Notes under the pieces: generated by a model
Seen by the model: the letters and a program-made list of their open reading frames with translations, nothing else
What the model was told of the DNA's origin: nothing
The model's database searches: none
Program-made: the position numbers and the translations under genes
Shown here: positions 13,723 to 58,594 of the stretch, in pieces
Numbering within the stretch: the stretch's first letter is position 1
Layout of the letters: the number at the start of each line of letters is the position of its first letter
DNA from: Marsupella aquatica
Taxonomy: Eukaryota > Plantae > Marchantiophyta
Direction: 5' to 3'
NCBI GenBank assembly: GCA_973895155.1
Contig: OZ316898.1
Location: forward strand, 15,468,330-15,532,329
Length of the DNA stretch: 64,000 bases

Positions 13723-14327
13723 ACCGAGTGTAGTGTTTCACCTCCAACATTCACTGGTGAGAACCTACAACATGGACACAACAGTAAGCTCAGCTCCCTC
13801 ATAATCTGTACTGTCTTGCCACTCTGTAGTTGTCTCTTTAAGTTCATACTGTGCATTTTTAGTTGCAGAAAGGTTTTACATTTTATCTCTTAAGTTTCAT
13901 GTGTTTAGGATACTTCTTTCAAACTTGAAACTCTATTGCTACCCACAGACAGTAGGTTGAAGAAAATATCCCGTTGACAATGCCCCATCCATGACAGCCA
14001 ACATCCAAGACAATCGTATAAACATTGGGTCCAAACAATTCAATCACATCCACAATATTGACATCCATGCATAAACATCAATGGGAATGTTCCTCATACT
14101 GGTATACAAAATAATTACCAAATAAATAAATAAAGTTTGAGTACTTTAGATGTTTTAGGAAGCCTTAGTCAATTAAACCGGGAGCACTGTCTCCATGCTT
14201 GTGCTAACCATTCACACAGTTCACAAAATGTGTGATTATGACAAAACATCATTGTTCCATTGATTAACTAACTGTATCGATGTCTACAGTAGTAATGATG
14301 TATTTGAACCAAAATGGACCAGGTGAA

Positions 14328-14981
14328 TCAAAGCCAGGAGATGTGATCATGAGCCGCTGTGCCTAGAGCAGGGTCAATAGGATGGTCAGGACAGTAAATC
14401 ATCCAACGTCCTTGGTCATGTGCAGTATGATGCCAGGGCACTCTGTCCGATGCAAAACCTTGACGCTTACTCTCGGCTAGGCAAGTACGATGCCAAGTTT
14501 TGGGACATCTCAAACACTGCACGGCCTCTGCCAGATGAGGGTCACCATGGTCCTGCTGGCATGCAACACATGTATGGATGGGGCAAGACTCCACATCAAG
14601 TGGCAAGCATCCATGACAATAAAAACGAACACAATATGGCTGGGGGCACTGCCTGGCAGTAGTAGAGACAATGCCACACTGAAAACACCTGTATGTCTTA
14701 TCCTTACACTCTGGACAATACCAAGGATCATCATCCTTGCCTGGTGCAATAAATACAGCAGGGCACCTGCCAACAACCTCACCAACTTTGGAAACATGGT
14801 GGAAGTGCCGATGGCAAGCCCCATCACACATGGCCAGATCTCCATGCCAGTCACAAATGCCACAAAGCTGGGGACTACACTGACGTTTCTCAACGTCTGA
14901 CCACAATTCAATCATCAACACATCTTCCTCCTTTCTCGTTCGAGTATCATTCTTTCTGGCTTTATGCTTGGTCCTAGCCAT
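14328..14981 (-). CDS. EDM2/NSD-like PHD-finger protein with histone-H3-like N-terminus (217 aa), CACTA cargo
   Basis: ATG at 14981 (context cataATGg), 8 nt after a tccag acceptor. Starts MARTKHKARK. Then CGIC...CDGACHRHFH...C...WYCPEC, RCFQC...CPQPYCVRFYCHGC, CPIHTCVAC...CLRCPKTWHRTC...MIYCPDHPIDPALGT..HDHI. Confidence 0.85.
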   Translation of the reverse strand: MARTKHKARKNDTRTRKEEDVLMIELWSDVEKRQCSPQLCGICDWHGDLAMCDGACHRHFHHVSKVGEVVGRCPAVFIAPGKDDDPWYCPECKDKTYRCFQCGIVSTTARQCPQPYCVRFYCHGCLPLDVESCPIHTCVACQQDHGDPHLAEAVQCLRCPKTWHRTCLAESKRQGFASDRVPWHHTAHDQGRWMIYCPDHPIDPALGTAAHDHISWL

Positions 14982-15739
14982 TATGACCACTGGACATGAA
15001 CAAGAAAACTTGAAGAGTTATTAAACTGTTAAATTGGTTGTCATAAAACACGTACTTACCACTTGCATATTGCAATCCAATGTGGGGCCAGAATGTAGAG
15101 GACTCACCAATTGTACTCAACCAAGAGGAAGGCAATGAAATTTGGAGATTGCCTTGATCGGTTTCAGATGTAGATCTCAATCCCCTCTCACGTCACAGGA
15201 TGTAAAAACAAGGATTCATAATCTGCAACAGCACAAATGTGACACAAAATATCATTTAAATGGAGCCACTACACAGAGCACTGGTTTGAGTTGGCAAGGA
15301 CTATGCATGGACAAACATTACATGGACACTCTTCAACTTTCTTCATTCACTGTACCCGATCTAGAGCCATAAGGCATATCTGCCAGGGGGGAGTGGGAGT
15401 CATTGACAGAGACTTTAACTATTGGATTCAACTTTCATTTAGCAATAGATTGTGGGCCTTCTGGAACAGAGTCATTGAACAGAGATGTTGAGTGGACTGG
15501 TGACATCTTAGATTAAAATGTTGTGCTTAGTAGATAGGGGTTTTGCAATGTACTTCAAAACTTTAATTCCACTGAGGTGTTCAAACCCTCAATACAAAAT
15601 TGTACGAATATATAGAAAAAGTCAAAACATAAGTTATTTCTCAGTGTTTAAGTTACTATTTCATCCAAAAATATGCCTTATCTCATTGCATCTTGGTACG
15701 TGCGTACTGTGTTAGAATTCCTGCAGGTGTAAACTAACT

Positions 15740-30600: not shown

Positions 30601-31666
30601 AATTCCGCTTCAAATCTGGAATGTGACGAACGTTCGTCAACGTATGCACAATTCCATCAAACATTTGAATGCGCATTGTACCTATGCCAATGACTTGACA
30701 AGGTTGATCATTCCCCATCAAGACGTTCCCTGATTTTGGCTCATAGGTGCAAAAGACCTCTTTGTCATGACACATATGAAAGGAACATGCAGAATCTAAA
30801 ATCCACTCCGGTCCCCCACCCTGGGAATTGGTACATAAGGCAAAACCAGCATCATCATCAGTAATAACAAAACTCGTCTGACTTTGAATGCTACCACCAC
30901 TCCTGCAATTCCTTTTAATGTGGCCCTTTTGACCATATTTCTAGCACTCAACACCCTTCGAGTCACGTGACTTCGATCTAGCCTTGGTTTTACCAGAGGA
31001 GCCTGTAAAACGCTCTCGTGACCTGCCCCTGGTAACTGCTAGTGCTGATCCAGATGAAGAAGAAGAACCGCTGTGTATCTTCTTTCGCATTTCATCTGAC
31101 AGCAGAGTGTTCACTGTCTCATCATAGGTCAACGTTGTCTTGCCATATAAGATTGTCTGGACCAGGTTCTCATATGAGCGTGGCAAGGAAGTAAGCAAAT
31201 GAAGGGCCTTTTTCTCATCCTCCACCTTCTCATTGAGACTCGCCAACTCTACAACGATTAAATTAAAACCATCAATATATTCGTGCATAGTTTTACCTTC
31301 AGCCATCTTGAAGTTCGTCAACTTCAAGCTCGTGTATAGTCGATTTGTCAACGACTTCTTCTCATACATCAGCTTCAGTCGATCCCACAGCTTTGTAATT
31401 GTGTCCTCCGTCATAACCTGAAGTAAAACTTCAGGTGCCAAGTGGAGCCTAATCAAACTAAGAGCACGATTGCCAATGTCTTCCCACTCCTCATTGGTCA
31501 TGGAGGATGGCTTGGTGCTGAATGCTGAACCCAAGCCCTGGGAAACAAGAACGTCCTTCATTTGTACTTTCCATAACGTGAAGTTATTGCGCTCGGTGAA
31601 TTTCTCCACTTCATACTTTGCACTGGTCACCTTCCGGGATGCCAAGACAATATCCCCTACGAACAT
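27684..31666 (-). pseudogene. Copia-2 gag-pol with several stops and a frameshift
   Basis: KYEVEKF, WILDSACSFH, LWHARLGH, SFIDDYS, YTPQQNG, YKARLVAKG, LYVDDML and KHIDIRYHF across ORFs 30941-31666, 30041-30775, 29136-29972, 28500-29117 and 27684-28463. Confidence 0.92.
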
Positions 31667-40519: not shown

Positions 40520-42035
40520 TATTAGGTTGATTGATTACTCGACCCGCTTGTGACAAAATCATGTTGTCTCGGTGTGCATTTGGCTTCATGATGTGTCCAC
40601 CAGGATGAAGTTTGCTTCTTCTCTGCGGAGCGACCGACGTTCTAAAGACGAACGGGCTACGTGATGAGCAGTCGTAGATTGGTGGGTAAAGACATCGAAG
40701 GAACACAAGCACGAGGGCGATAATGAGGTGCAATGGGATGAGAGTGCAGTTATGGATTTTACTTTGGCAATTGTATAATGAATCCCACTCCTGTCAGCTA
40801 GCTCGCTTACCTTGGTGCAGGCATCACCGGTTGTAGGTACTTTGCAAGTTGGTGTAGCAAGCAAGCAGCCGAAAGGGAGAGCGGGGAAACCCACCAATAG
40901 GGCAGGATTTTGTGCGACAGCATGCAGAGAGCCCACATGGGTGTTCCATCAAGAATCGAGATAACACCAATAATTGATCGTATATATTTGTATTAAGACA
41001 AAGATGTTTTGTCCTCACTCGTCTGCCTCACCGTGCCTCCTCTGCAAGATGCACGAGTCCTTGGACGAGGAAAATGAATGCTTCAAGAGGATCGGATATG
41101 TATTAAACCACAGCTGCCAGTATAAGAGGCTACGGGTTACCCGTAGCCTCTCATTATACACAGAGGCAAGTCGCATTTCGCTAGGATCCGGAAAAAACGG
41201 AGGCACGCGGGCAGGATTGCCTTGGGGCAGCCCGGCTAGACAGCCGGGCTTCACAGGCCTTCTTACCGGGTTGATACATGTTTAGATATAGATGGGTCCG
41301 CAAATACAGGCATGACGTTTAGATAGCACATTGGTTGCATCGTCCCCTGCGAATCGAGACGTCGTGAGTTCAAAACTCTGCTTATTTTGGCTCTACGCTT
41401 GTGCGAAGGCCTTTGGCCAGGACGGGGTGGATGGGCAAGGAGATTCCCTGAGCAGGAGGGGGTCGGTGAAGTCTCCGAACTCACCAAACACCTGGTGACC
41501 TTGGCAGGATCAACGACACTTGGCGAGGGGAGGGCTGGCGCTTATGTGAGAGGGTGAGAGTTGATGGCCGCGCCGCAAGGAATGCCCAGGAAAGGAAAGC
41601 AAGCACTGGCATGACGGACACCAGGTGGAGAGAGCTTTTCTAAACTAAATAAATGGTCATATACTACTGGATTCCGATTTCAGTCGAACAGCCCGCATGG
41701 CTCTACTGGTTGTGGCCCTCTTTGGAGCGCAGGAGATCCTGGGATCGAGCCTCAGCGGCGCCGATGGTTGCGCGGCCCTTTCTTTTTGAATCTTGTCACT
41801 TACGGGAGAGCGGAGGTAGGTGGAAGGACCAGGGTGCCTCCTGCACTACCCTTGGCTGAAGCTGGCGCTGCGCTTCAGTATGAATACAAGTACTTACTCA
41901 CAATTTCCGAACAGTCCGGACGACTTCTTGGTAGTGCGTTTCCTTTGCGGGTGAGAGGTGTCGAGTTCAACGTCGGCAGACGTTGTTGCATACGCGTTAC
42001 ATTTTGTGGCGCACAAGGTGCAAAGGATTGTGCAC

Positions 42036-42171
42036 TACACAGCCGAAAGGAATGTGCCTAGTAGTATTGAAAGGAACGTGTGTCGAAAGGTCCAACGTGT
42101 GCTACAGTCGAAAGGTCCAACGTGCGCTACAGTCGAAAGGTCCAACGTGCACTACAGTCGAAAGGAACGTG
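42036..42171. repeat. ~22-bp minisatellite (TACAGTCGAAAGGTCCAACGTG-like)
   Basis: Several tandem, partly degenerate copies. Confidence 0.8.
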
Positions 42172-42318
42172 AGTTACGTTTTACCGTCATTTCAATTGTA
42201 AGTGCATGGTCGGAAGTGGGGGAGGCTTTCAACATTTCAATTGTAAGTGCATGGTCGGAAGAGTGGAGGCTTTCGACAATCTCCGTGTTTTTTAAATCAT
42301 TTTTTTTTAAACTGACCG

Positions 42319-43145
42319 ACACTCATGAGTAGGGGGCTAGCTACATTAGTGTTTTGACAATTATCTGCTTTTTCTAAATTGTGCAGAGTCACACTCATGA
42401 GTAGGGGGCAAGCTAGTATTTTGACAATTATCTGCTTTTTCTAAATTGTGCAGACTTGTAGAAGAAGGAGAGTCCTCTCGGCTCTCAACAATGTGACTGT
42501 GTTTTTAGAGAGAATTTGCGCTTGGTATGTGAGGAAGAGCTAAGATAAAGTATAATGGGGAGACCATGAGATAAAACCTATATCAATTGGCCACAACATA
42601 AAAGGGGAATGAAGAGCGAATGATTGAATCCTTTACATTATTTATGCACTGGTCACTACATAGTTTTTGTTGCATGTTATTATTTTTATATTCACATACT
42701 TTGCACACTTCTATGTTTGACATCTGTTTAGAGTCACACTCATGAGTAGGGGGCTAGCTACAGTAGTGTTTTGACAATTATCTGCTTTTTCTAAATTGTG
42801 CAGAGTCACACTCATGAGTAGGGGGCTAGCTAGTGTTTTGACAATTATCTGCTTTTTCTAAATTGTGCAGACTTGTAGAAGAAGGAGAGTCCTCTCGGCT
42901 CTCAACAATGTGGCTGTGTTTTTAGAGAGAATTTGCGCTTGGTATGTGAGGAAGAGCTAAGATAAAGTATAATGGGGAGACTATGAGATAAAACCTATAT
43001 CAATTGGCCACAACATAAAAGGGGAATAAAGAGCGAATGATTGAATCCTTTACATTATTTATGCACTGGTCACTCTACATAGTTTTTGTTGCATGTTATT
43101 ATTTTTATATTCACATACTTTGCACACTTCTATGTTTGACATCTG
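42319..43145. repeat. ~415-bp tandem duplication upstream of the Kolobok transposase
   Basis: ACACTCATGAGTAGGGGGCTAG...TATGTTTGACATCTG occurs twice. Each copy begins with an internal ~70-bp duplication. Confidence 0.9.
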
Positions 43146-43204
43146 ACCTTTTTTCCAGCTCATGAGATTTTAGGCAAATGCGGTAAAGACTATATTTGTG
43201 CACC

Positions 43205-46200
43205 ATGTCTACAAAGGATGACCCACGTCATCGTGTCTCAGACCAGCGGAAGCGGCCCCCTCAACGTGGTGGCCTTCCTCGGAAAAAATACCCTAGTGAT
43301 GATATAGACTATAAGAGGCTTCGGAGACCGGATGCAAGGCCTGCAATCCGAGTCCCGCTTCACTTGTGGAGTGAATGGGAGGAATTGAGAGTTTTACTTG
43401 GTGATGAACATACTACACACTCAGCTGTCATAGAGTGGTTGTTTCATGAAGTGCGAGATAGGGTTGAGCATTTGAGGACATGGCAAGCAGCGCCCGCTAG
43501 AATGCTACAAGATGAACTTGCATTAGCGACAGACATTGGAACATCGTCAACCTTTATGAATCCTAGGAGCAGTCAATGTTCAGAGGATCATTACCAGGAT
43601 ACAAATTTACATGATGTATGTTTAAATAGATAATTTTGTTATGTCTTTATATGTTTGTTTTTCATCTAGAACAGGCATACAAGATTTTAATCTTTCTTGC
43701 AAATAAAATTTCCTTTTTTGAAACTTGTGCTGTCTTCGGGGCTGTCTTGGGATAAGTTTCTCTTGGGGTTTGTAGATGTGGACTTTTTCAAGCCCTATTT
43801 TCCAAAACAATAACCAGTCCATAATGCTATTACATGTGTGGCTACTTTTGACAGAGTCAACAATCTGTAACAAGTGATGCACAAGTGGAAGAGGAAGAGG
43901 AATTGCAAGAGCATATTGTTGAACAATATTCATCAGATGCAGAGGATGAAGCCATGTATCGAGATGAAGATACAACCGTTCATTATGCTTTAGGAGCTCC
44001 CATACATGAGGATGTTGTGGAGGAGGTGCAACAACTTACATTCCCTACACATTTCTTTTTTCAAAGCATACTCTATTTTCACATATCACACTTTGTGTGT
44101 TTATTTCAATTCTTCTAACTATGTAAATATTTGTATTGAACTAGGAGGATGTAGTCTTGGATTCTCAATCACCAGAACGACCTGCCTTGCAACCATCAAT
44201 AGTTACAAACTCACAATCAATACCACCTAGTACCTCTGACCCACCAGTTTCACGTAGGTCTCTACCTCGTCGACCAGCTACAATAGCATTTTTTGAGCGA
44301 CACTTAATTCATAATTTTGTTCAAAGACTACTTCCTAGGTGTCATATACCTGCATGTTCATTGACTCCTATTGTGGAGCGTATTGGAGAGTTGCAACAAG
44401 TGTGGTCTATTAGGATTAGTTGTGGGCAAGCTGGACATGGGTGGACGTTTGTGACTGGTGAGAATGAGTCGGGAAGGAATTCACCATTGATTACTCCTAT
44501 GCTATATCATTCCACTTTATGTGCTGGTCTTACATTTACAGCTCTAGCCGCATTGACATCACATTTAGGTTTGCATGTCCCTTCTGCAACCCATTGGCAT
44601 GATTTTCAAAGTGGAAGACGACGACCTCAAGCAGGATGGATAGATGCTGTAAAGCAGCAATGGGAGGTAAACAAAAGTGAGGTGTGGGAAGATGTAAAAA
44701 CTCGACTCCAGCAGCAATGTGCACCTCATGAAGGTTTGTAAATGAAACTATTATACAAGAAAATTAAGCTTATATATAACTTAGTTAACTTGTTTCAATG
44801 AGGTTTGTACAACAAAAGCATGTTTTATTGTTATTTCGTGGTTTTGCTCTAACATGAACAACCTTTACACATTGGACTTTGATTGAATAAATTTTAGGTT
44901 TTTTGTGAATAATTTTATACCCAACATCATATATTCTTGGTTTTCTTGCAGATCCTGGACTAGTTGTGTTTCTAGATTGTCGTTGGGATTCTTCTCGGAG
45001 TGGGTATCATGGTACTTCTTCTATCATTGATAGCTACGATAATAGGGTCCTTCAGATGACCACTGTAAGTAGAAGAGAGGAGAGAAACTCTTGGTACATG
45101 GAAGAAATTGGGGCAAAGAGGGTACTAGATAGTCTCACGGATGCGGGAGTTGTTATAAAAGAGGTTATCCATGATGACAAAAGTACCATTGATAAAATCA
45201 TTGAGGACATGGGATTTATAAACCAGAAGGACTTATGGCACAAGGCTAAAAATTTGGTGAGGAAATTTGTGGACAAGTTGGCAAGTGCCACATTTACCCT
45301 AACTGTTGACATAGACACTGTGACATCTCGCTCTGATTTGCAAGCAGTTACAAATAAAAAGTTGAAAGACTGGTTGAAGGATAGGGGTATTAGAGGTTAC
45401 TCTAACTTGAGAAAGGAAGCGTTAATTCATCGAGTTGCGGATTTGCGTGGGCTTCCTGAGGAGGAGCTTGTACACATTGCCACCCGTGGTCTCAAGTTTC
45501 CAGAGTTAGCGGAGCATAATTTGGCAAGCAAATTTAAGACCTGGTTCTATGTGTGTTCAAGAACATGTAAAAATAGGTGTGCCATATTACAAAAGTATTG
45601 CACATTGCTTGAAATGCTACCTTGATTTATATAATCTTTGGAATACCTTGATAGATATTTTATAGATGAAAATTAATTTATAGCTTGTTTATAAAAAAAA
45701 TTCTCACTACTTTGCAATGCAGGAGTGGAGACAGTGAATCCTTGGCTTTTGAGTTAGGGAATTGTGCAGATCATTGGGCTGGTGACCATGAAAAGTGCAT
45801 GACACTATCTGATCGGCCTTGTCAGCATCTTGGAGAATCTAATGCCTTACAATTGGACTTGTACTATGAGAGAGGTAAAACAAATACTGTGCCACAAATA
45901 TTCAATGATTTTGCATTGAGACAAATTCATATTATGTTTTGGATGTTGCATGACATAGTAATTATAAGATAAATAACCAGTTTTTCTTTTGGAATGCAGA
46001 TGGGGAAACTCACAAGGCCATGAAAGCTTTCATGACCAAGTACATAAAGCCAGAAAAAATGCGATTTTATACCATGGCTCGTGAGAACTTTATGTCTGAA
46101 ACATTCCATTCTGTAATGGGCAAGTATGCCATAAAGCGTATTCATTTTCCAGCTACTCACGATGCGCGTTTATGTTGTACTGCTATGGACTGGAATGAAA

Positions 46201-46346
46201 ATATTAGGAGACATGTTTGGAAGGTTCGTGATCGTCGAGCAGTAAACACAGTTGTTCGTGATAGACCCTCTCGTTCACGAGTATTAGTGGATCGTACCAC
46301 AAGTTGGAAGGAGCAAACAAGTCTACGTATCTATGGAGTACCTTAG
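43205..46346 (+). CDS. Kolobok-like DDE transposase, 764 aa, 6 exons (43205-43615, 43855-44025, 44145-44733, 44952-45576, 45723-45874, 46000-46346)
   Basis: All five introns are GT-AG and phase-compatible (2295 nt, no internal stop). Motifs: DCRWDS...GTSSIID, SWYMEEIG, VIHDDK, QKDLWHKAKN, HWAGDHEKC, SETFHSVMGKYAIKRIHF, ARLCCTAMDWNEN. Confidence 0.85.
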
Positions 46347-47271
46347 ACCTAAACCAACATATATGAGGTAATTATATTTTGCCTATACAATAACATTTGT
46401 TTTTGTTTAGAGACATTGGATTGAGGGTGGGTTAAATGACTAGATACCTCAGTTTTTATGTATGTTGACAAGTGGTCTAATTGTTTCATGAATTGATTGT
46501 ATGTTATAATTGCAGAGGGTTGTTTCTTTGAAGACATGCAAGTAAGACCTGGGGATGTTTTACTTCCATTATGTTGTAGGGGGCACTTGGATTTTTTAGT
46601 ATTTAGCATGTAGAGCATTGTAACACACTGATGCAACTTTTGTCTCATAATATGAAAAGGTTTTACCTTTCCCACTATTTGTTTGTTATTGATTCCAAAT
46701 TTGTTGAAGATATAAATTTTGTCCAATATAACAAAAATATGGTACATAAAACCCTAATTTGTACACACAATTGTTTGGTAAGTAACACAAATCTTCTATA
46801 GAGAAATAAAACACAAAATGTTATTATGATAAAACAGACTATGCTTTGAATGTGTGTATCCAAGGTTGGAGAACCAACCATTCCCTAGACAAGCTTTTTC
46901 TTTTGGTATATGGGGTGTACTGCCAAACTAAAATGGATGAGAAAAGTTCATATGTGAAAAGTTTCCCAACAGAATACTCACAACATAGGTACAATTGAGT
47001 TGACAATTACTCCCAAGGGGGTTTGAACCCCTTTTTGTTGCCATCCAACAGGAGTTCCAACCCTAAGGATAAGGAAGGAGGCACAGGCCAAAAAAATATA
47101 AAATATGCTATAACAAATAACCCAGATAAATCCTATACTTGACAGAGTTAAGAAACGCTGAAGAAAGAGATAAAGTAAAAGAGAAGAAAAGAGAAGCAAA
47201 AAGTTAAAAACACATAAAACAACCAAGTACAAACCCAACTCCAAAATATGAAGAACAAAGTATCAACCATG

Positions 47272-47619
47272 CTACTCGCCAAGTGTCTTCCAGGTGGCAT
47301 GTATGGCAGATGTAAGATTCCCTGGAAGGGCTGTCGGTTCCAAGAATTTGGCAACTGATGCCAATTTCTCAGAAACAACATGACGCTGACGAGAAGGAAT
47401 GGCCTCAACATAAGACCAAGCCGCACACATGTGGAAGACTTCAGCATGCAATGGAGAATGAAGAGCAGCGTTGAGTTCAACAAGGTTGTTGTCAATGGCC
47501 TCACAAAATGCTAAGAACTTTGCAACAATATCATCATGCCTCAAAAGAAGAGCCCTCCTTTTCTGAGGTGGAGTGACCGGCCATGTTAAACGATACAATC
47601 CCCCACCGTAGGATACCAT
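47272..47619 (-). CDS. KolX-like paralogue B (115 aa)
   Basis: ATG after a tgtgtag acceptor (47645). Aligns by eye with paralogue A: FLAFC/FPEFC, CAAWSYVE/CAAYSYVD, IHATW/IKATW. Confidence 0.7.
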   Translation of the reverse strand: MVSYGGGLYRLTWPVTPPQKRRALLLRHDDIVAKFLAFCEAIDNNLVELNAALHSPLHAEVFHMCAAWSYVEAIPSRQRHVVSEKLASVAKFLEPTALPGNLTSAIHATWKTLGE

Positions 47620-48561
47620 CTCTGCAGGTCTATTTGGATCCTCCCTACACATGGTATGCCACAAAAAATAGCTGCAATTGGTAACAAATAATGAAAACAA
47701 TGGATAGGTAATGCAGCAAAATATCATGAATAAGAATTGACAAAGCAAAGATGAAATGAACCTTAGATAATTCATGTTGCCCGAAACGAAGAAGGTTAGG
47801 TTGGAAACCAAGCTAAGTACAAGGAAGACTAAAACATATGCATACATATGCATACATAGAATGAAAAAACTTTGGAGTGAGAATGAGTAGAAATAATTTC
47901 ATTACCACTTTGGGGTAAGATTGAGGACATGCTATGTTTAGAAGCAATAGCGACCAATCCTGCATTTACACAGGCCTTGGTTCTCACTTGACCTATACTT
48001 GGGGCTTACACAACCCTTGGCTCATACTTGGCCCATACTCAGCCCATACTCGGCCCATACTTTTGGCATGGAATAACTTATTACACCTAGGGACCAAAAG
48101 AGGTGGATTTTATTATCACGTGTGTGAGCAAAATACTCCCAAGGGGATTTGAACCCCTTGTGCTGCCGACCAGCGAGAGTTCAATCCCAAAGAAGGGATT
48201 TATTTATATTATAAGTAAGCAAAGGACATTACAATATGATAGACTAATATGGACGAAATCCTACAAATTCCTCATGTGGGTCATGCCATGTTGCTTTGAT
48301 GACTGCTTCCACTGCATCTGGGAACTTTGTTCGCTCTGCATAACCACATACCCAAGCCAAGTGCGTGTACACTTGGTAGCGTTTCCGCTTCATCACACTA
48401 TCCACATAACTATATGCAGCACAAATCAATATTTGTTCCAAAGGTACAACAGGATTGAGTGCATTGTGATATTGTGTGACGACACGACAAAACTCAGGGA
48501 AATCAGATCGGATCTCGTCTAAGTGTTGGGTATTTACTCTTACGTCTAGGTTAGGTATGAC

Positions 48562-48740
48562 GTGGTTGGTACAACAACGTGGGTTGGTACAACTACGTGG
48601 TTAGGTACAACTATGTGATTAGGTACAACTATGTGGTTAGGTACAACTACGTGATTAGGTACAACTATGTGGTTAGGTACAACTACGTGATTAGGTACAA
48701 CTATGTGGTTAGGTACAACTATGTGGTTAGGTACAACTAA
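48562..48740. repeat. 18-bp tandem array (10 copies) in the Copia-3 LTR; also at 53930-54108
   Basis: GGTACAAC core every 18 nt; unit G(G/A)TTAGGTACAACTA(T/C)GT. Confidence 0.9.
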
Positions 48741-49000
48741 GTTGCACACTATATCATAAGAGGCATGTGTGCTTGGAGAGGTAGAACCAAGGCTCATTGT
48801 TATGGAGCCACTTGAGAGATAGGGAGAGCTTACACTGTGGAGACTCGGTATAGCCGACGGGCTTAGAGTTCAGTAAAGTTCTCTTGTGTGTTCCCGTGGA
48901 CGTAGCCTCAAGGAGGTGAACCACGTATCTCTTGTGTCGACTATTGTGCGTTGGATGGTTCATGGGCTTGCCGTTGCGATCGTCGTCTATGCTCAACAAT

Positions 49001-49012
49001 TGGTATCAGAGC
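49001..49012 (+). promoter_or_regulatory. Primer-binding site (tRNA-iMet) of Copia-3
   Basis: TGGTATCAGAGC, 2 nt after the LTR. Confidence 0.95.
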
Positions 49013-49422
49013 ATGCTTGGGAGGTGACGTGTGTTCGTGACGGGATTTCATGACGGTTTTTCCAGCGTTGAGTGTTGGTGGATTTTCCAGAGTTCCATCG
49101 CATGGAACTTGGAGTTTATGGGCTCAACGGATAGATCAGGGCAAGAGCTTTCTAACGGTGTGAAGAAATCGTTGAACGGAGCTCGTGGTGCAGAGAGATC
49201 TAAGTTTTCGTCATTCTGGATTTTGTGAAGAAAGTTGGCAATCGACTCGGAGGGAGAAGCGTCAAGTGTTTTGACTCAACGGAGAGATTGAGGCAAGACG
49301 ATTGTTTTTGAGTCCGGGATTGGCTCTTTGATGCAAAGAGGAAGGCTAAGCAAAATCAATTACCTTGTTGGACTTGGTGACGGCACCAAGTGCAATTGAT
49401 CAACATTCGTTGTTGACAAGAC

Positions 49423-50427
49423 GTGGAACTTGAAGCACGAGGATCACCGCGGAGGTTTCAGGGGCAGAGAGAGGAGCAGGAGGAAGAGCACGTGACACCG
49501 ATACCATCACCGGTGCGGCGTGTGGTGGAGGAAGCAGTACTACTACCGGAGCTCACGGTAAAGAAGAAGATGGGGACTTTCAAGCTTGGGGGACCCAAGT
49601 ATGAAGTGACAAAGTATGATGGGCGCTCTGACTACTTGCTATGGGAGAAGCAAGTGAAGGGAGTGCTTTATGCGTCAGGGATGGGCCAACTGCTGAGCCC
49701 TCGTGAAGACGATGTTGATGAGAAACAATGGGACCGCATGCAGGAGCAGGGAGTGTGGTGTGTTACACTCTATCTCATGCCTCCCATCATCAAGCAGTTA
49801 GGTGCACATAAGGATTGCATGTCCTTGTTTGCGGAATTGCAGAGCAAGTATCACCGCAAGGAGTTGTCGAACCGGCTCTACACTTCCTACAAACTGATGA
49901 GTTTCAGGATGAAGGAATCTGGTACGAAGTTGCAAGACCATGTGGATGCTTTCAACGACATGGTCGTTGACTTGGAAAACCTTGGGGAGACTTTGAATGA
50001 TGAGACGAAGGCTCTGCAGCTTCTTAGTTCATTGCCTCCATCTTACCAGTCCCTATCACGAGTGTTGTTGCATCGTGATAGGGATACCATTTCATACAAT
50101 GACGTGGTAAGTTCTCTGCTTAGTGATGATCTTCAGCAGAAGATGCACATCACGTCATAGCCTTCATCATCTGGTGCTGCCCTCAATGTTAACCGTGGGA
50201 GGAGTATGCAGCGACCAACTGGGGACCGTAGAACCCAGTTTAGATCTAAATCCAGATCTAAGTCCAAGGGTAAATCCCCTCAGAGGAGGCAGGTGACATG
50301 TTGGAAGTGCAACCAAGTTGGACACTTCAAGCGAGACTGTAAGGGAAAGGCAGCGGAAACTTCATCGGCAAATGTGGCTAGGGCTGATGGAGAAGCTGAT
50401 TTACTCAATGATGAGTATGTTTTATGA
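49423..50427 (+). CDS. Copia-3 gag (in-frame TAG at 50158-50160; ends at TGA 50425-50427)
   Basis: KYEVTKYDG, LLSSLPPSY and zinc knuckle CWKCNQVGHFKRDC. Confidence 0.85.
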
Positions 50428-53400
50428 AGCCGGGGGTATGCCCTGTGCACGTCATCTAGGAGAGCAGATGATGTGTGGATTCTTGATTGTGCTTGCTCTT
50501 TTCATATTTGTTACATTCGTGAGTTTTTCAGTTCTTACTCTGTTTCAAACGGTTCAGTTCTGATGGGAAATGATCACTCCTGTCAAATTGAGGGAATTGG
50601 GTCTGTGAAGATTCAAATGTTTGATGGCGCTGTGCGCATAGTGTCCGGAGTCAGGTATGTACCTGGCATGCGTAAGAATCTGATTTCACTCGGTGTGTTG
50701 GATTCAAATGGTCATCAATGGAGCGTTATTGATGGTGAACTTCAAGTCAGGTCGAGAGAGACAGTGATTTTGAAGGGGAGTAGACAAAAGAATTTGTATG
50801 TGTTACAGGGCAATACTGTATGTGGAGAGGCCAATGTAACCAAGTCTCACGAGGAGATGACTCAACTGTGGCATTCACGGCTAGGCCACATGAGTGAGAA
50901 GGGTTTGGCTATCTTACGGAAGAATGGACTCATTTCTGATTTGCAATCTTGTAAATTAGAGTTTTGTGAGCATTGCATTCTTGGAAAGCAGCATCGTCGT
51001 GCTTTTGGTGTTGGAACTCATCGTTCCAAAGCGGTTCTTGAGTACATACATAGTGACGTGTGGGGTCCATCCCCGACTCCCTCACACTCTGGAAAGTTGT
51101 ACTATGTATCATTTATTGATGATTACTCAAGATTTGTGTGGATTTATTTCATGACGCATAAGTCTGATGTCTTGTCCATTTTTAAGAAGTGGAAGGCCCA
51201 GGTGGAGAATCAGACTGGAAACACGATCAAGTGTTTGGATACAAGGGTGAAGAGTCTGAGGTCAGACAACGGCGGGGAGTACACTTCAATGGAATTTGAA
51301 GAGTACTGTTCAGAACAGGGGATAACTCGCCATCTCACCACAATTTATACTCCGCAGCAGAATGGTGTCGCTGAGAGGCTCAATCGGACACTGTTGGAGC
51401 GGTCACGGAGTATGTTGAGCCAATCAGGTTTACCACAAGAATTTTGGGCAGAAGCTGTCAATACCGCAGCTTATTTGGTAAATCTTTCTCCTTCTAGTGC
51501 TATCAATTTCAAAACGCCGTTTGAGATGCGCTATAAGCGGCAAGCAGACTATCATGGCTTGGTAATTTTTGGAAGTGATGCATATGCTCTCACACCAAAG
51601 CAGAATAGGACCAAGTTGGATCCTACCTCCAGGAAATGTGTTTTTCTTGGGTACCAGAGTGGTGTGAAAGCCTATAGGCTATGGGATCCTATTGCCTGTA
51701 AGCTCGTTGTCAGTAGGGATGTTTCCTTCAATGAATCCAGATTATTGAAGGAGGGGGAGAATACTCAGGTCTCCCGTACTGACAAAGGAAAATCTCCTAT
51801 CCCGGATCTCGTTGAGGGGGAGATTGGTTATGAGATGCATGACCGGAGAGAAGGAGTTGCTCCAATTATGGAGCTGGTTCCTATGCCAGAGGAACCAGAG
51901 GAGTTTGTTGATGCTGGTGAGCAACAAGTGGATGCTGTTGAGCTTCAAATTGTACCAGCACACGCAGATCAACCGGAGTCATCGACTAGAAGAACATCTG
52001 GTCGCACTGTACACGCTCCATCAAGGTATGGACAGTGGGTTGATTCATCTCAACTGCAAGAGGATGATTTTACAGCTGATGATGAGGGTGATGCGTTAAT
52101 TTTGGAAGAAGGAGAACCTTCTTCATTTCATGAGGCAAGTGCTTCAAAAGAGAAGCAGAAGTGGACTGCAGCAATGCAAACGGAGATGCAGTCACTAAAG
52201 GACAACAAAACTTGGGAGCTTGTTAAGCTGCCTAAGGGTCAGCAAGTGGTGGACAACAAGTGGATTTACAAGCTGAAGGATAATTTCATAGGAGGTGGAT
52301 CGAAGGTCTACAAGGCTAGATTGGTAGCAAAGGGATTCACACAAGAGAAAGGTGTGGATTATAATGAGGTCTTCTCACCAGTTGCTAAGTACTCTACAAT
52401 ACGACTATTGTGTGTACTTGTTGTAATGTTTGGTCTGCTCCTAGATCAGATGGATGTTGTCACAGCTTTCCTCTATGGCACATTGGAAGAGGTGATCTTC
52501 ATGAGACAACCGCTAGGTTTTGTGAAGAGAGGACAGGAGGAATTGGTTTGCAGATTGCTGAAATCCTTGTATGGGTTGAAGCAGTCACCAAGACAGTGGA
52601 ACAAGCGGTTTGACGATTGGATTCGGTCACAAGGTTTTCACAGAAGTGTATTTGACCCTTGTGTGTATTTGAAACCGGTGAAGAATGTTGTCTTTGGGTT
52701 CATTGTTTTAGTACTTTATGTGGATGACATGCTAATTGCAGCCAAGGATAGGTCTGAGATTGTTAAGCTCAAGGCACTGCTTAGTGCAGAGTTTAAGATG
52801 AAGGACTTAGGGCCAGCTAAGAGGATTTTGGGTATGGAGATCACTAGGGACTTGGAGGCTGGCAAGCTATGGTTGACGCAGAGCAGTTATGCGAGGAAGG
52901 TAATTGCAAGGTTCAACATGGAGAATAGCAAGCCAGTAAGTACCCCGTTGGCTCCACACTTCAAGTTATCATCAGCGTTCTGTCCTACGGATGACACAGA
53001 GAAGGGGTTGATGTCAAAGGTTCCATATGACAAGGCAGTGGGGAGTCTCATGTATTTGATGACTTGCACTAGACCTGATCTTGCCATGACTATGGGCAAG
53101 GTGAGCAGGTACATGTCGAATCCAGGGAAGGTACACTGGGAAGCAGTGAAGTGGATTATCAGGTACTTGAAGGGTACCGTGGATCATGGTCTTTTATTTG
53201 ATGCGAATGCAAAGAATGCTAGATCATTGATTGGCTATGTAGATTCTGACTATGGACAAGATTTGGACCGAAGGAGATCAACAACAGGATACGTGTTCAC
53301 ACTTGGCGGTGGATGCATAAGTTGGAGGTCTACTTTGCAGAAGTGTATTGCTCAGTCTACTACAGAAGCGGAGTATGTTGCAGCTGCGGAAGCAGCAAAG

Positions 53401-53700
53401 GAAGCGATTTGGTTGGATAGACTTATCACTGAAATGGGATTGCCACAGGGGAATGTGAAGCTCCATTGTGATAGTCAAAGTGCGCTCCACCTTGCTGTGA
53501 ACCAGGTGATGGACAGTAGAGTGAAGCACATTGACGTCAGGTACCATTTTATCAGGCAGGCTGTGTCTGATAATTTGTTTGAGCTAGTCAAGATTGATGG
53601 TAAACTCAACCCGGCTGACGCATTTACCAAAGTGATTCCTTTGGAGAGTTTCTCTAGACACCGTGACGTATTGCAGGTTTTGCAATTGCATCACAAGTAG
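50428..53700 (+). CDS. Copia-3 pol (PR-IN-RT-RNase H), uninterrupted and in frame with gag
   Basis: 1075-aa ORF with WILDC, IHSDVWGP, LRSDNGGEY, YVDDML and KHIDVRYHF. Confidence 0.95.
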   Translation, partial: SRGYALCTSSRRADDVWILDCACSFHICYIREFFSSYSVSNGSVLMGNDHSCQIEGIGSVKIQMFDGAVRIVSGVRYVPGMRKNLISLGVLDSNGHQWSVIDGELQVRSRETVILKGSRQKNLYVLQGNTVCGEANVTKSHEEMTQLWHSRLGHMSEKGLAILRKNGLISDLQSCKLEFCEHCILGKQHRRAFGVGTHRSKAVLEYIHSDVWGPSPTPSHSGKLYYVSFIDDYSRFVWIYFMTHKSDVLSIFKKWKAQVENQTGNTIKCLDTRVKSLRSDNGGEYTSMEFEEYCSEQGITRHLTTIYTPQQNGVAERLNRTLLERSRSMLSQSGLPQEFWAEAVNTAAYLVNLSPSSAINFKTPFEMRYKRQADYHGLVIFGSDAYALTPKQNRTKLDPTSRKCVFLGYQSGVKAYRLWDPIACKLVVSRDVSFNESRLLKEGENTQVSRTDKGKSPIPDLVEGEIGYEMHDRREGVAPIMELVPMPEEPEEFVDAGEQQVDAVELQIVPAHADQPESSTRRTSGRTVHAPSRYGQWVDSSQLQEDDFTADDEGDALILEEGEPSSFHEASASKEKQKWTAAMQTEMQSLKDNKTWELVKLPKGQQVVDNKWIYKLKDNFIGGGSKVYKARLVAKGFTQEKGVDYNEVFSPVAKYSTIRLLCVLVVMFGLLLDQMDVVTAFLYGTLEEVIFMRQPLGFVKRGQEELVCRLLKSLYGLKQSPRQWNKRFDDWIRSQGFHRSVFDPCVYLKPVKNVVFGFIVLVLYVDDMLIAAKDRSEIVKLKALLSAEFKMKDLGPAKRILGMEITRDLEAGKLWLTQSSYARKVIARFNMENSKPVSTPLAPHFKLSSAFCPTDDTEKGLMSKVPYDKAVGSLMYLMTCTRPDLAMTMGKVSRYMSNPGKVHWEAVKWIIRYLKGTVDHGLLFDANAKNARSLIGYVDSDYGQDLDRRRSTTGYVFTLGGGCISWRSTLQKCIAQSTTEAEYVAAAEAAKEAIWLDRLITEMGLPQGNVKLHCDSQSALHLAVNQVMDSRVKHIDVRYHFIRQAVSDNLFELVKIDGKLNPADAFTKVIPLESFSRHRDVLQVLQLHHK

Positions 53701-56700
53701 AGTTTTCTTAAACATTCATTGTAATTACTGATATATGCTCTTCCTCATTCCTATGTATTAGGCTACGGCTTAGTTTTGGTTTGCTCTAGTTAGAGAGGGA
53801 AACCGGTTTGGTTTCTGTCCAGAACTTCCCGCTGAGGGATCATATACATTGGCAGTATTACTCTCCCCTAGACCAGAGTCAAGGGGAAGATTGTTGGGTA
53901 TTTACTCTTACGTCTAGGTTAGGTATGACGTGGTTGGTACAACAACGTGGGTTGGTACAACTACGTGGTTAGGTACAACTATGTGATTAGGTACAACTAT
54001 GTGGTTAGGTACAACTACGTGATTAGGTACAACTATGTGGTTAGGTACAACTACGTGATTAGGTACAACTATGTGGTTAGGTACAACTATGTGGTTAGGT
54101 ACAACTAAGTTGCACACTATATCATAAGAGGCATGTGTGCTTGGAGAGGTAGAACCAAGGCTCATTGTTATGGAGCCACTTGAGAGATAGGGAGAGCTTA
54201 CACTGTGGAGACTCGGTATAGCCGACGGGCTTAGAGTTCAGTAAAGTTCTCTTGTGTGTTCCCGTGGACGTAGCCTCAAGGAGGTGAACCACGTATCTCT
54301 TGTGTCGACTATTGTGCGTTGGATGGTTCATGGGCTTGCCGTTGCGATCGTCGTCTATGCTCAACACTAAGTTTGTCCTACGTTGGATGGGAGGAGCCTC
54401 GTGTTCAGCTTGGGCATTGTGCCAAAGCAATACAAAGGACCCATCATCGCATTGATTCAATGTGACCTTGGTCCTGTGCTTGTTGGCCATTGTTCGCGGA
54501 CTGCCATAAAGAAAGTAGATGTTAGTCAAAGTCAAGGAGTGGAATGACATAACAACAATTTGAGGTAAAAAAATTACCTCAAAGTATCACAACTCCTATG
54601 TTTGTTGCCAACTATCATCAATTGTTGTGAAGGTTTCATAAAAGGAACTGTCCAATAACGCCAATCTTTTTTGACATGTTGATTGCAAGCCATGACCAAC
54701 GTGACGATCCTGGTTCCATCTTCTTCCATTTGCAAGCACAAAACTCTGAAAAAGTAAACATTTCAACCAGAAGGTCACGATGATACTCTCTATAGTGGAA
54801 CTCAAGCTATAGTAGTACAATAAAGGGGGACCAGTTGATGTGGAGTAAGAATGGAATCACCCAACCCTTGGGTGAGAACCTGAAATGGTCGTGAGGGTAA
54901 GCACCGAGTAGCCTTCCTCCTCCTCTCCCTCGGCACGCAAACTATCCCGGCACGCAAACTATCCTTCCTCTTCCTGAAATAGTTGTGAGGGTAAGACCAA
55001 CTATCCTCCCTCCTCCTCTTCCCTCGGCCTCGGCGTCACGAATTGAGTTTGTACCTTTGAAAAAATATTTGGAGACAAGGTACAGTCAGAATTTTATCCA
55101 ACAACGAGGGCTCGATGTCCCAACAAATTTTGCTGTCGGTAGACACGATGATGTTGTCGACACTGCAGTTCAGCAGGCGCCGCAAGGAATCAAAAAGAAA
55201 TTGAATTCACATGTAGCTGATGACAGTCCCTGGTGACAACACCATGAGTGGAACTAGTTCCAATTCAACTAAAACGCAGCCGAATGTAGTGAACGATGCC
55301 AATCCGAGTAGCAAGATTGATTGATCCAAAGAAATTTGGAAGAAAAAGGTGGCGACAACTTTCGGGAAGCAACTGTGTATGAGTGGAAAAGCTCAAGGGA
55401 GGGCTGGGCAACGGCAACAACTTTCGAGAAGCACTGTGTATGAGTGCAAAAGCTCAGGGAAGGTCTGGTCAGCGACGCGCTACGTAATCACTCAAAAATG
55501 AGGGGAGAGATGGGCGTAAGCACTGGCTTCGTCAAGTGCTGTCGTCTGGACTACATTTTCACTCACACAGTTTCATGTGTCGGCCGAGCTCCCTGCTCTA
55601 CATCCAGGTCCACCTCCTACTCCTTCATACGTTCATAAGGACAGACACTTGTGAGAGCAAGAGACATTGCCCAAAATTCCCACGAAGGAGCTCCCTGCTC
55701 AGTGAAAATTTCCGCGCCGATGATTCTGTCCGTGCAGCCTCGTCTTGTTTTCAAGCAGTTGTAGAGGATCGGCAGAATTGGAAAGATTCAAGTCGGCATG
55801 AAATTCTCAGTCGAGCAGAGTTATCGAGAGGCTGGAGGTCGCCGGAGGAGAGCAGAGAATCCTGTCAAAGGGCGTCATTATGGAGAGGGCTCGAACTTAG
55901 AAGCGAATGCGCAGCCCGAAGGTTGTGAGATGACAAACGAGCTGTTTGACGTCATACCAAACTGGATGAATTGACGCACAGGCAGCAATTGATGCACTTG
56001 GATTACAACATTAGGTATTAATTTATGACGCGGTGCTCAGTGAAGCTCAACAAAAAGCTCTGGGAACGAACAATAGTCTAAATCTTGGTTTTAAACCCTT
56101 GGGAGGCTCTTGACCGGACTTGAACGTATCTTATGAGTGAATCATAAGATCATAGAAGCTGTTCCAGATACATCAACCAGGCAGGATGGGGTCTCGGAAT
56201 CCTAGAGTGATACGCCTATCCGAATCAGCTGGATGGCCAAGAGTCAAAGGAGGAGAAGAAGATGCAGTGTCGGTACTCGTGGTGCCAAATTGGAGTAGCT
56301 CATGTAGCTCATGGTCGATCGACTCACCTACTAATCGAAGGAAGGCAACATCTTCTCTAGGATCGAGTAGCTCATCGTCGACTGCTTATGGAATTGTGTA
56401 GAAACGAAGGTCCCAGATTTTCTGGGTGACAGGCAACGCGAGGAATGATGACTGAACTTTTGATTGTAAGTTGCAGCTATGGAGATTCTACAGTACTGAT
56501 GTGCAACGAAGAACACCACAGCCCAGCGTGAGCGTTGGAGGCAGCGTTGGAGAGGAATGAGGATCACTTGCCGGGTTGGAGAGGATTGCGGATCACTTGC
56601 CGGGCCGCGGAGCTATTCACCCGGGATCACTATACATCCGGGCAGCAAACAATGATGAGCCGGGCAGACCACGGGCCCTTTTATACTGGCAGCTGTGGTT

Positions 56701-58594
56701 TAATGGATGGACTGTGGCGCTCAAGTCGACACTCGTAAGGGAGATCATTACCGTTAGAGATTGTAACTTGAAATGAAACGAAACTTGAAATGCTTCATGA
56801 AGATTATCTGGCTTCAATTGACTTGGGAAGGAAGATAATGTCTCCAGTGCTGAAATTGGCATGGGATTTGGACCTGATTTGATAACCCGCCGTAGCAGTT
56901 ATCTTGAAACAATCTGTCTTCCTGGAGCAGGACCTCGTAAAGAATCCTGGAATCAAATCTCACTTCCTTCAACTGAACTGTTGTAGGATTCTTCACAACT
57001 TTGTTTTCTGCACATCATGGAAAGGAAATATGCGATCCGAGATGCGATCACCATGTAATGACTTCAAGCCAAGGTTACGAAGAATGTGAAAATAGATTCT
57101 CGATCAGCCCAGTCATTGCAGGTTTGCTTGACTCGCTTTCTTTTCTTTTCCTGGAAATTCTCACTCAATGACTGTAATACGAACGTGCTTGCTGCTCTTA
57201 GTCTTTTCGAGGAAATATCTGCTATTAGAGCGGAGCCTTCCTATCACGGGTGCTGAGATGTCAATGCTCACTGACAGGGAAGAGAACGGGAGAATTCCAA
57301 TCGAACAGATTAGTATTCAGGACGGCCAGGCACAACACAAGTGCTACGAATTAGCATTATAAAGCGTTGTCCTTGACGTTACGAACGTACACTTCCGTAC
57401 TACAGAAGTCCAGACCTAAAACTCCAGATCTGAGAACGGCAGAAACCTCGAATGCTATTGAATGTCAATCGAGATAGACGATCTAGGCAGCCTGAATTCG
57501 AGTTTTTAAGGATTGTTTAATTGTGTTGTTGGAATGGTCCCGACCATATTACATTTAGCAATTCGAATTGTCATCGCTCCTCCAACGTTTTACTTTCTAA
57601 CAAGAGATTTCCCTTCCCCTTCTGCTGTCGTGAAGGAAAGAAACGCCTTATCTTCTCCCTCGCTGTTTTTGCCCGTCCGTCTAGTTCGTTTCGTTTGCCT
57701 GCCCATTCGTTTTTTGTTTTTTTCCGTCGTCGTCCGTCTTTCAGAGGTTTTCAATTGCATTTCATTTCAGTCCAAAGAAGCCGATCGTTCCTCGAGGACT
57801 AAAACCTGTCATTATCTAGCAATAAAGAAAGTCCAGATTATCGACACTCGCGAACGGCATAGACCAACGTCAGAGGAATTGCCCCATTACTACAAGTTTG
57901 TTGTGGACGGAATGCCCTAGTGATCGTTCTTATCACCAATGTGAATGGTCACAGCGGGAAAGTTTAGGGAAGTTGGGAATTTTTGCTGAAGAGAATTGAA
58001 GGTGGTCAATGTCAAACAGTGAGGTTTAAGATTCACGGTGGTGAAAGATATAACAAGCATAGAGAGTCGATATGGGTTTTTACATGATCATTTCGTTCCC
58101 TTTGAATTAGGCATCTCTTGCCTTTGCGTTGTCGGGGCACAGAAAATTGCATGTAATTGTCATCTCTACGCGTTCAGGATTTTTATTTTCTTACCGAACC
58201 CTCCTTGCACAAGGCAGGAAGGTTCGGTGAGAAAAGTGAGCCAAGGTGCAAAACTTCCGAAACAGCTACAGTAGCTTCCCGTTGATCGGTCAGCACTTTC
58301 TTGGAATGTGAACCTTTGAAGTCGTTCGAAGCAAAAAATGATCAGTCAGGAGGCAGGGGCGGATATCTCGTCTGTCAGCAGTGAAGTTAAGTTCTTCGAG
58401 ACATCTGGACCTGATGGATAATTATTATCTTCTTCTTCTACCATATAATACTTGATCCCGCCAGTTTACATGTGGTGCAACAATGTGATCTCTAAGGCAC
58501 CTGACCAGTAAAAGTATTTTTAAGGTTTTTGGATTTTAGCTAGTGTGTCTAATGTTAGCATCTCTAAGGGAGTAGATGCTAAGAATATTAATTA

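What the first reader, a model, noticed from the sequence alone, without database searches (positions are those of the whole stretch)
41103..56703. Complete Kolobok-type transposon with an intact spliced transposase in a plant genome
Seen: TTAA TSD, perfect 19-bp TIRs, a six-exon 764-aa DDE transposase with no lesion, and small convergent genes on the opposite strand. Known: TTAA targets, this transposase motif set (DxRxDS, S..ME..G, D.WH..K, E.FH...KY..KR..F...AR...A.DWNEN) and a tail-to-tail KolX gene define Kolobok, described mostly from animals, protists, fungi and algae. It is not among the superfamilies usually listed for land plants. The termini here begin AC rather than the usual RR, and I see no THAP domain. 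Inference: a distinct, recently active plant Kolobok lineage.
Basis: partly seen in the sequence, partly recalled or inferred. Interest (0 to 1): 0.8.

Follow-up and report, generated by a model that had tools for sequence, protein, structure and literature searches.

The report
Liverwort Kolobok transposon, hit by Copia
This is a real TTAA-inserting cut-and-paste DNA transposon of the Kolobok superfamily in a liverwort-like plant genome; its transposase gene reads as intact, but a very young Copia retrotransposon sits inside it and has split one of its two small companion genes.

Summary
TTAA flanks both ends (41103-06, 56700-03). The terminal inverted repeats match at 19/19 and 22/23 bases. 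Six open exons joined by GT-AG introns add up to 764 codons, and every conserved catalytic motif is present.

The Kolobok assignment is supported.
- Relatives of the transposase are few and come from streptophytes: the liverworts Riccia and Calypogeia, plus Chara and Closterium.
- As a profile they align with an animal group at hhalign probability 99.9% over 423 columns.
- A scallop member of that animal group sits in a canonical Kolobok element: TTAA flanks, 5'-AG ends and a convergent KolX gene.
- A Riccia element has the same TTAA flanks, the same ACCAC...AGTATAAAAGG ends and the same left-end hairpin.

- 5.8 kb of the 15.6 kb is a nested Ty1/Copia element (48524-54366) with identical LTRs and a CTAAG duplication.
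- That insertion splits accessory gene B in frame, so the element is not lesion-free.
- The two small minus-strand genes are paralogues conserved in liverworts, but homology to KolX is not shown: no P2RX7_C hit, hhalign 5.7%, and one weak structural hit that the second model did not reproduce.

"Recently active" is untested. Distinctive traits are AC termini, no THAP domain and a SAP insert. The scan flagged this family before on other DNA of the same genome.

The parts
41103..41106 (.). left TTAA (putative target-site duplication)
   Evidence: TTAA also flanks the Riccia relative
41107..41129 (+). left terminal inverted repeat: 23 bp, the first 19 perfect, starting 5'-AC
   Evidence: 14/23 identical to the left end of the Riccia element
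41120..41159 (+). subterminal palindrome, found at the left end only
   Evidence: -15.6 kcal/mol, z -6.5. A hairpin lies at the same position in Riccia L004 (z -7.0) with a different stem sequence. Neither right end has one.
42319..43145 (+). about 417-bp tandem duplication just upstream of the transposase ATG
43205..43615 (+). transposase exon 1 (N-terminal basic/helical region; no THAP)
   Evidence: weak match of Riccia P0005 residues 3-29
43855..44025 (+). transposase exon 2 (acidic linker). This is the least certain exon: it has no homologue support.
   Evidence: only GT-AG sites and an open frame
44145..44733 (+). transposase exon 3, with the Cys/His-rich region C..C ... C....H.W
44952..45576 (+). 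transposase exon 4: first D (44975), S..ME, second D (IHDD), the D..H signature (DLWH) and a SAP-like insert at 45350-45445
45723..45874 (+). transposase exon 5 (DHWAGDHEKC motif)
46000..46346 (+). transposase exon 6: catalytic E (SETFHS), the KY..KR..F...AR...A.DWNEN tail and the TAG stop
47272..47652 (-). accessory gene A: 126 codons plus stop, a single exon, intact
   Evidence: orthologue P0175; model pLDDT 86
48244..48523 (-). accessory gene B, 3' part (ends ...VGFRPY plus stop)
48524..54366 (+). nested Ty1/Copia LTR retrotransposon. LTRs are 48524-48998 and 53892-54366 (475 bp, 100% identical, TG..CA). The 5-bp duplication CTAAG lies at 48519-23 and 54367-71.
54372..54490 (-). accessory gene B, 5' part (starts MANKH...). 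It is in frame with the 3' part once the Copia and one CTAAG copy are taken out.
   Evidence: P0170 spans the break without interruption
56677..56699 (-). right terminal inverted repeat (ACCACAGCTGCCAGTATAAAAGG on the minus strand)
   Evidence: 19/23 identical to the right end of the Riccia element
56700..56703 (.). right TTAA

Best explanation
The block 41107-56699 is one copy of a cut-and-paste DNA transposon of the Kolobok superfamily. It belongs to a lineage found in streptophytes and, within those, to a liverwort clade.

Likely mechanism (inferred from the superfamily, not tested here): the 764-codon DDE transposase binds the roughly 23-bp termini, excises the element and inserts it at TTAA with a 4-bp stagger, which duplicates TTAA. 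This transposase has a C/DxxH signature and a SAP DNA-binding motif inserted between that signature and the catalytic E.

The element carries two small paralogous genes, tail-to-tail with the transposase. These are conserved partners in liverwort elements. Their role is unknown; a transposition cofactor or regulator is a guess.

In this copy the transposase frame and both termini look intact. A very young Copia element has landed in an exon of accessory gene B. The copy therefore has one clear lesion, and if B is required it would depend on other copies for that function.
For: Ends
- TTAA flanks and terminal repeats matching 19/19 and 22/23.

Gene model
- Six open exons, all introns GT-AG, 764 codons, all family-invariant residues present.

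Relatives of the transposase
- phmmer with exon 4 against 1.84 billion representatives gave only 148 hits. The best are Riccia sorocarpa, Calypogeia fissa, Chara and Closterium.
- None of the best 30 that I named is an ordinary plant MULE.
- The streptophyte profile aligns with the animal profile at hhalign probability 99.9%, E 4.5e-35, over 423 columns.
- The animal member P0159 lies in an Argopecten element with TTAA flanks, 5'-AG termini matching 35/40, and a convergent gene that hits Pfam P2RX7_C at 4.9e-15. That is canonical Kolobok of the Kol0 group.
- Motif blocks match the published Kolobok alignment of Kojima & Bao 2022, PMC9587614.

Cross-species conservation
- The Riccia element L004 6876-15584 has TTAA on both sides, ACCAC... 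termini (19/23 identical to the window's right end), the same left-end hairpin and a convergent B-like ORF.
- In the tree, exon 4 falls inside a liverwort clade with SH-aLRT 96.

Gene B and the Copia
- Taking out the Copia and one CTAAG copy restores a 133-codon frame. The natural 133-aa protein P0170 spans that point.
Against: - The termini start 5'-AC, not the 5'-RR given for Kolobok.
- There is no THAP domain.
- The accessory genes are not detectably KolX.
- The nearest Pfam model for relatives is PF20700 'Mutator-like', mostly below threshold.
- TTAA is a palindrome, so a single copy cannot separate a duplicated target from a terminal-repeat extension. No empty site was found.
- Splicing is predicted, not observed. 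Exon 2 has no homologue support.
Confidence: 0.85

Rival explanations
1. It is a separate superfamily-level lineage of the C/DxxH group (the group that holds MULE, P, hAT, Kolobok and Dada). On this reading it is sister to Kolobok rather than a member, and acquired TTAA targeting and its own accessory genes independently.
For: AC rather than RR termini in two species. No THAP domain. No KolX. A SAP insert that the animal group lacks. In the tree the streptophyte rows form one clade apart from all animal rows.
Against: hhalign gives 99.9% over the whole core, including the Cys/His region upstream of the first D and the long tail after the catalytic E. Published Kolobok is itself very diverse, with several accessory-gene types and lineages that encode only a transposase. 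TTAA is shared.
Confidence: 0.1
2. It is a Mutator-like element (MULE) that happens to be flanked by TTAA.
For: Relatives give weak hits to Pfam PF20700 'Mutator' (16 of 148) and PF10551 MULE (3 of 148). The atlas neighbours carry PF20700.
Against: The window's exons hit no MULE model even at E up to 1. No 8-11-bp duplication lies outside the TTAA. The same weak Pfam hits occur in the scallop protein, which sits in a canonical Kolobok element with KolX. Abundant plant MULE and FAR1 proteins did not appear among the named best hits.
Confidence: 0.03
3. The copy is an immobile fossil. The open frame is not translated into a working enzyme, so the family is not 'recently active' here.
For: Gene B is destroyed by the Copia. 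The Riccia relatives examined are decayed or lack recognisable ends. An earlier follow-up on another copy in this genome reported a stop codon. Splicing is unverified.
Against: 764 codons without a stop across six exons. All invariant residues are kept. The terminal repeats match 22/23. The only lesion is an insertion whose LTRs are still identical, so it is very young. A natural intron-free 691-aa relative sits on a 2.4-kb JGI contig, which suggests that relatives are transcribed.
Confidence: 0.4

Closest known systems
Kolobok superfamily, Kol0 group (for example Kolobok-1_XT; here represented by the Argopecten irradians element L002 7766-22852)
   Same: DDE transposase with the blocks D..(W/F)DS, S..ME, D, D.WH.K, H...(G)DH..C and E.FH...KYA.KR..F...AR...A.D(W/Y)N.N. 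TTAA flanks. A small gene convergent with the transposase.
   Different: Termini start 5'-AC rather than 5'-RR. There is no THAP domain. A SAP motif is inserted in the catalytic domain. There are two paralogous accessory genes that lack the seven zinc-binding Cys and do not hit P2RX7_C. The host is a land plant.
Riccia sorocarpa element L004 6876-15584 (GCA_046195345.1, CM100796.1), unannotated as a transposon
   Same: TTAA flanks, ACCAC...AGTATAAAAGG termini, a left-end hairpin at the same offset, a SAP-bearing transposase and a convergent B-like gene.
   Different: About 40% protein identity. The Riccia copy is decayed: a stop in the B-like ORF, terminal repeats matching 16/23, and a 535-aa gene model.
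piggyBac
   Same: TTAA target. Some piggyBac families are reported to carry a Cys-poor protein resembling the KolX C-terminus (PMC9587614).
   Different: The transposase fold family is unrelated (no DDE_Tnp_1_7 hit), and the termini are not CCC...GGG.
MULE / Pfam PF20700 'Mutator-like transposase'
   Same: C/DxxH-type DDE core; weak sub-threshold Pfam similarity in relatives.
   Different: 4-bp TTAA flanks rather than an 8-11-bp duplication. No MULE, SWIM or FAR1 domains. Short terminal repeats.

Membership tests
Kolobok | DDE transposase homologous to Kolobok transposases | tested here: met
   hhalign probability 99.9%, E 4.5e-35, 423 columns, against an animal group whose scallop member lies in a TTAA/AG/KolX element. 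Motif blocks match the published alignment. No outgroup-rooted tree was possible.
Kolobok | [quoted passage not shown] | tested here: met
   DLWH at 45230-45241; W, H and K are nearly invariant in the family alignment.
Kolobok | TTAA target-site duplication | tested here: met
   TTAA lies on both sides here and in the Riccia element. Caveat: no empty site was found, so the duplication itself is inferred.
Kolobok | Termini 5'-RR ... YY-3' | tested here: not met
   5'-AC...GT-3' in the window and in Riccia. The scallop relative has 5'-AG.
   No THAP hit in exons 1-3 at E up to 1. Among the 148 hits, only the Ixodes protein has THAP.
Kolobok Kol0 group (KolX partner) | Accessory protein with the P2X7 cytoplasmic-ballast fold and seven conserved Cys | tested here: inconclusive
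   No P2RX7_C hit for the window pieces or the liverwort proteins, while scallop KolX exons score 4.9e-15 and 3.7e-7. hhalign against bivalve KolX gives probability 5.7%, P 0.0067, over the C-terminal 48 columns ending VGF. Rat P2X7 residues 506-594 ranks 12 of 48161 at Z 4.0 for the gene B-type model, but is absent from the top 50 for the gene A model. The Cys residues are absent.
MULE | 8-11-bp duplication, MULE/Transposase_mut domain, long terminal repeats | tested here: not met
piggyBac | DDE_Tnp_1_7 transposase and CCC...GGG termini | tested here: not met
Ty1/Copia (the nested element) | LTRs TG..CA, 5-bp duplication, tRNA-Met-type primer site, gag then protease-integrase-RT order | tested here: met
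   Retrotran_gag_2, gag_pre-integrs, rve, RVT_2; TGGTATCAGAGC follows the 5' LTR.

The most novel reading that the evidence does not exclude
Streptophytes, including land plants, carry their own old lineage of Kolobok transposons, apparently inherited mostly vertically. It has a SAP-bearing transposase, ACCAC termini with an asymmetric end hairpin, and a pair of accessory proteins of a fold not seen in solved structures. At least one liverwort still holds copies able to move. That would give plants a native TTAA-specific cut-and-paste system comparable to piggyBac.
Probability: 0.3. Interest if true: 0.7.

Novelty: new variant of a known kind. Interest (0 to 1): 0.55.

Why it matters
Kolobok is not among the DNA transposon superfamilies curated for land plants. 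The 2022 review of its range lists only chlorophytes and rhodophytes among plants (PMC9587614), and no held paper links it to bryophytes or streptophytes.

A structurally complete element conserved between liverwort species would do three things:
- extend the range of the superfamily to land plants;
- explain a set of 'SAP domain-containing' hypothetical proteins in liverwort annotations;
- offer a candidate native TTAA transposon for tagging in Marchantia-type models.

It also shows that the accessory-gene slot of Kolobok can hold yet another protein type.

Tried and rejected
- Pfam on each exon found no transposase family.
- Pfam on ten minus-strand open stretches gave only a sub-threshold DUF4272 hit, which I treat as chance.
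- Foldseek against the PDB with the accessory-protein model found nothing at E up to 0.001.
- hmmsearch of the accessory profile against PDB sequences gave no hits.
- hmmsearch of the transposase-family profile against the PDB found only SAP domains.
- hhalign of the accessory profile against a single scallop KolX exon gave probability 0.25%.
- A search for an empty site or a second copy of the flanks within the window found nothing.
- A scan for TTAA plus terminal repeats around the Riccia gene in L001 and the Closterium gene in L003 found nothing. Those copies may be decayed, domesticated or larger than the fetched flanks.
- The Yuan & Wessler 2011 paper is not held.
- Two literature searches were badly framed and returned irrelevant papers.
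- piggyBac and MULE readings were rejected on the membership tests.
The 764-codon figure is arithmetic on coordinates.
- The only joining done was in a script: the two halves of gene B with the Copia taken out, to check the frame.

Full report
**Observation**

The window shows gta|TTAA|ACCACAGCTGCCAGTATAAGAGG at 41103 and CCTTTTATACTGGCAGCTGTGGT|TTAA|tgg ending at 56703. The inverted repeat is perfect for 19 bases and matches at 22/23 when extended. The 19-mer occurs only at these two sites in 64 kb, against 0.01 expected by chance. No longer direct repeat lies outside the TTAA.

**Gene model**

Six stop-free stretches on the + strand can be joined by five canonical GT-AG introns of 239, 119, 218, 146 and 125 bp that keep the frame. 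The exons are 43205-43615, 43855-44025, 44145-44733, 44952-45576, 45723-45874 and 46000-46346.

Where several splice pairs were possible, I chose the one that fits tblastn alignments of homologues. Exon 2 has no homologue support and is the weakest part.

All searches used single exons by reference.

Positions 48524-54366 are a Ty1/Copia retrotransposon.
- It has two 475-bp LTRs that are 100% identical, with TG...CA ends.
- A 5-bp duplication, CTAAG, lies at 48519-23 and 54367-71.
- The primer site TGGTATCAGAGC follows the 5' LTR.
- It carries gag, integrase and reverse-transcriptase domains.

Without it the host element is about 9.7 kb.

**What the transposase is**

Pfam finds nothing in the exons. 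phmmer with the 219-aa exon-4 ORF against 1.84 billion representatives returned only 148 proteins at E up to 0.001. Some of those match only through a SAP motif.

The best named hits are 'SAP domain-containing' hypothetical proteins of the liverwort Riccia sorocarpa and proteins of the liverwort Calypogeia fissa. Next come Chara braunii, Closterium and a Pyramimonas/Prorocentrum transcript. More distant hits come from scallop, sea urchin and tick.

The animal proteins P0159 and P0168 carry the block pattern of the published Kolobok alignment in Kojima & Bao 2022 (PMC9587614).

A profile of 14 streptophyte proteins aligns with a profile of 7 animal proteins at hhalign probability 99.9%, E 4.5e-35, over 423 columns. 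The alignment runs from a Cys/His region upstream of the first D to the tail after the catalytic E. The only large gap is the SAP insert of the streptophyte group.

I then checked that the animal group really is Kolobok. The scallop gene lies in an element (L002 7766-22852) with TTAA on both sides and 5'-AG termini matching 35/40. That element also has convergent ORFs hitting Pfam P2RX7_C at 4.9e-15 and 3.7e-7. This is the KolX fold that defines the Kol0 group.

The window protein keeps every invariant or nearly invariant residue of its family.

**Cross-species support for the ends**

Around the Riccia gene P0004 I found an 8.7-kb unit (L004 6876-15584) with these features:
- TTAA on both sides;
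- termini ACCACCACTAACAGTAC... and ACCACCACTACAAGTATAAAAGG, the latter 19/23 identical to the window's right end;
- a convergent ORF homologous to the window's gene B (E 1.6e-14).

In both species the left end, and only the left end, carries a strong palindrome at offset 14-53. The z-scores are -6.5 and -7.0, against +1.1 and +1.3 for the right ends. The stem sequences differ, but the position and the GGGT(T/A)ACCC centre are kept. Conservation of this kind marks these as functional transposon ends.

**Tree**

In a quick maximum-likelihood tree of 31 rows (LG+G4, SH-aLRT support only, midpoint root for drawing), exon 4 falls in a liverwort clade with support 96 and is nearest to Calypogeia. 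The Chara, Closterium and animal rows lie further out. Rows not included: fragments shorter than about 230 aa and hits that match only by SAP.

**Accessory genes**

Gene A (47272-47652, minus strand, 126 codons) is intact and has an orthologue, P0175.

Gene B is split by the Copia. With the Copia and one CTAAG copy removed in a script, the minus strand reads an uninterrupted 133-codon frame from 54490 to 48247, followed by the stop at 48246-48244. The natural 133-aa protein P0170 (57% identical) spans the break.

A and B are paralogues: 33% identity, E 4e-13. The family is found in Riccia, Calypogeia and unnamed assemblies, and has no Pfam domain.

AlphaFold models are confident (pLDDT 82.8 and 86.1). 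Both show three strands followed by six helices.

Are they KolX? The evidence is mixed.
- Against: there is no P2RX7_C hit and no PDB sequence hit.
- Against: hhalign against 11 bivalve KolX proteins gives only 5.7% probability (P 0.0067). It does use the register I had seen by eye, the C-terminal 48 columns ending in VGF.
- For, weakly: rat P2X7 residues 506-594 ranks 12 of 48161 for the B-type model (Z 4.0, rmsd 2.8 Å, 69 residues).
- Against: the same chain is absent from the top 50 for the gene A model.
- Against: none of the seven zinc-binding Cys is present.

I rate true homology at roughly one in three. The safe statement is that they are positional analogues of KolX and form a liverwort protein family of unknown function.

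**Origin of the contig**

The rest of the window holds a CACTA transposase with DUF4218, further Copia pieces and a PHD-variant ORF. Together with the liverwort placement of both the transposase and the accessory genes, a plant origin, most likely a liverwort, is well supported. The species itself is not in the protein collections; the best identity is 43% to a named protein.

**Activity**

One copy cannot show recent movement. In favour are the open 764-codon frame, the conserved residues and terminal repeats matching 22/23. The only lesion is an insertion whose LTRs have not yet diverged. By inference, with plant rates near 1e-8 per site per year, that puts the insertion under roughly 0.1 million years old. 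Against are the disrupted gene B and the lack of copy comparisons.

**Earlier scan notes**

The scan flagged the same family at six other places in this genome. One follow-up reached the same Kolobok, liverwort-like conclusion for a copy with a stop codon.

**Verdict**

This is a real Kolobok-superfamily element of a distinct streptophyte/liverwort lineage. It is structurally complete except for a Copia-disrupted accessory gene. The KolX identity and recent activity are not established.

Noticed in passing
window 49423-53700: The nested Copia has a single reading frame (all ORFs in frame 1). It is interrupted by in-frame stops at 50158-50160 (before the zinc-knuckle segment 50206-50427) and at 50425-50427 (gag/pol boundary), although its LTRs are identical. 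This may be programmed readthrough or a very recent defect.
   Followed up: partly
window 48560-48739 and 53928-54107: Each Copia LTR holds about ten tandem copies of an 18-bp unit (ACGTGGTTAGGTACAACT).
   Followed up: no
window 42319-43145: A 417-bp tandem duplication (98-100% identical) lies directly upstream of the transposase start codon. It may be a duplicated promoter or 5' UTR region.
   Followed up: no
window 9218-12498 (-) and 14331-14990 (-): A CACTA transposase (Transposase_21 plus DUF4218), with a neighbouring ORF that has a variant PHD finger (PHDvar_NSD, E 4.6e-06).
   Followed up: no
L001 15054-15245 (-), Riccia sorocarpa CM100795.1: A B-like accessory ORF lies inside a called gene whose product carries a p450 Pfam hit (13950-15491). 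This is probably a fused or mixed gene model downstream of a transposase copy that has no recognisable ends.
   Followed up: partly
P0032 / P0150 / P0151: Proteins of one 90%-identity cluster of transposase relatives are attributed to both Pyramimonas sp. and Prorocentrum in a transcriptome collection. This suggests cross-contamination between those data sets.
   Followed up: no
P0003 (JGI contig of 2385 bp): A 691-aa relative is encoded without introns on a short metagenome-type contig. It is likely a transcript, which would mean relatives of this transposase are expressed in some environmental bryophyte or alga.
   Followed up: no
window 3498-4283 (+) and 27687-31666 (-): Further Copia-type integrase and SH3 fragments; the window is almost entirely transposable elements.
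   Followed up: no
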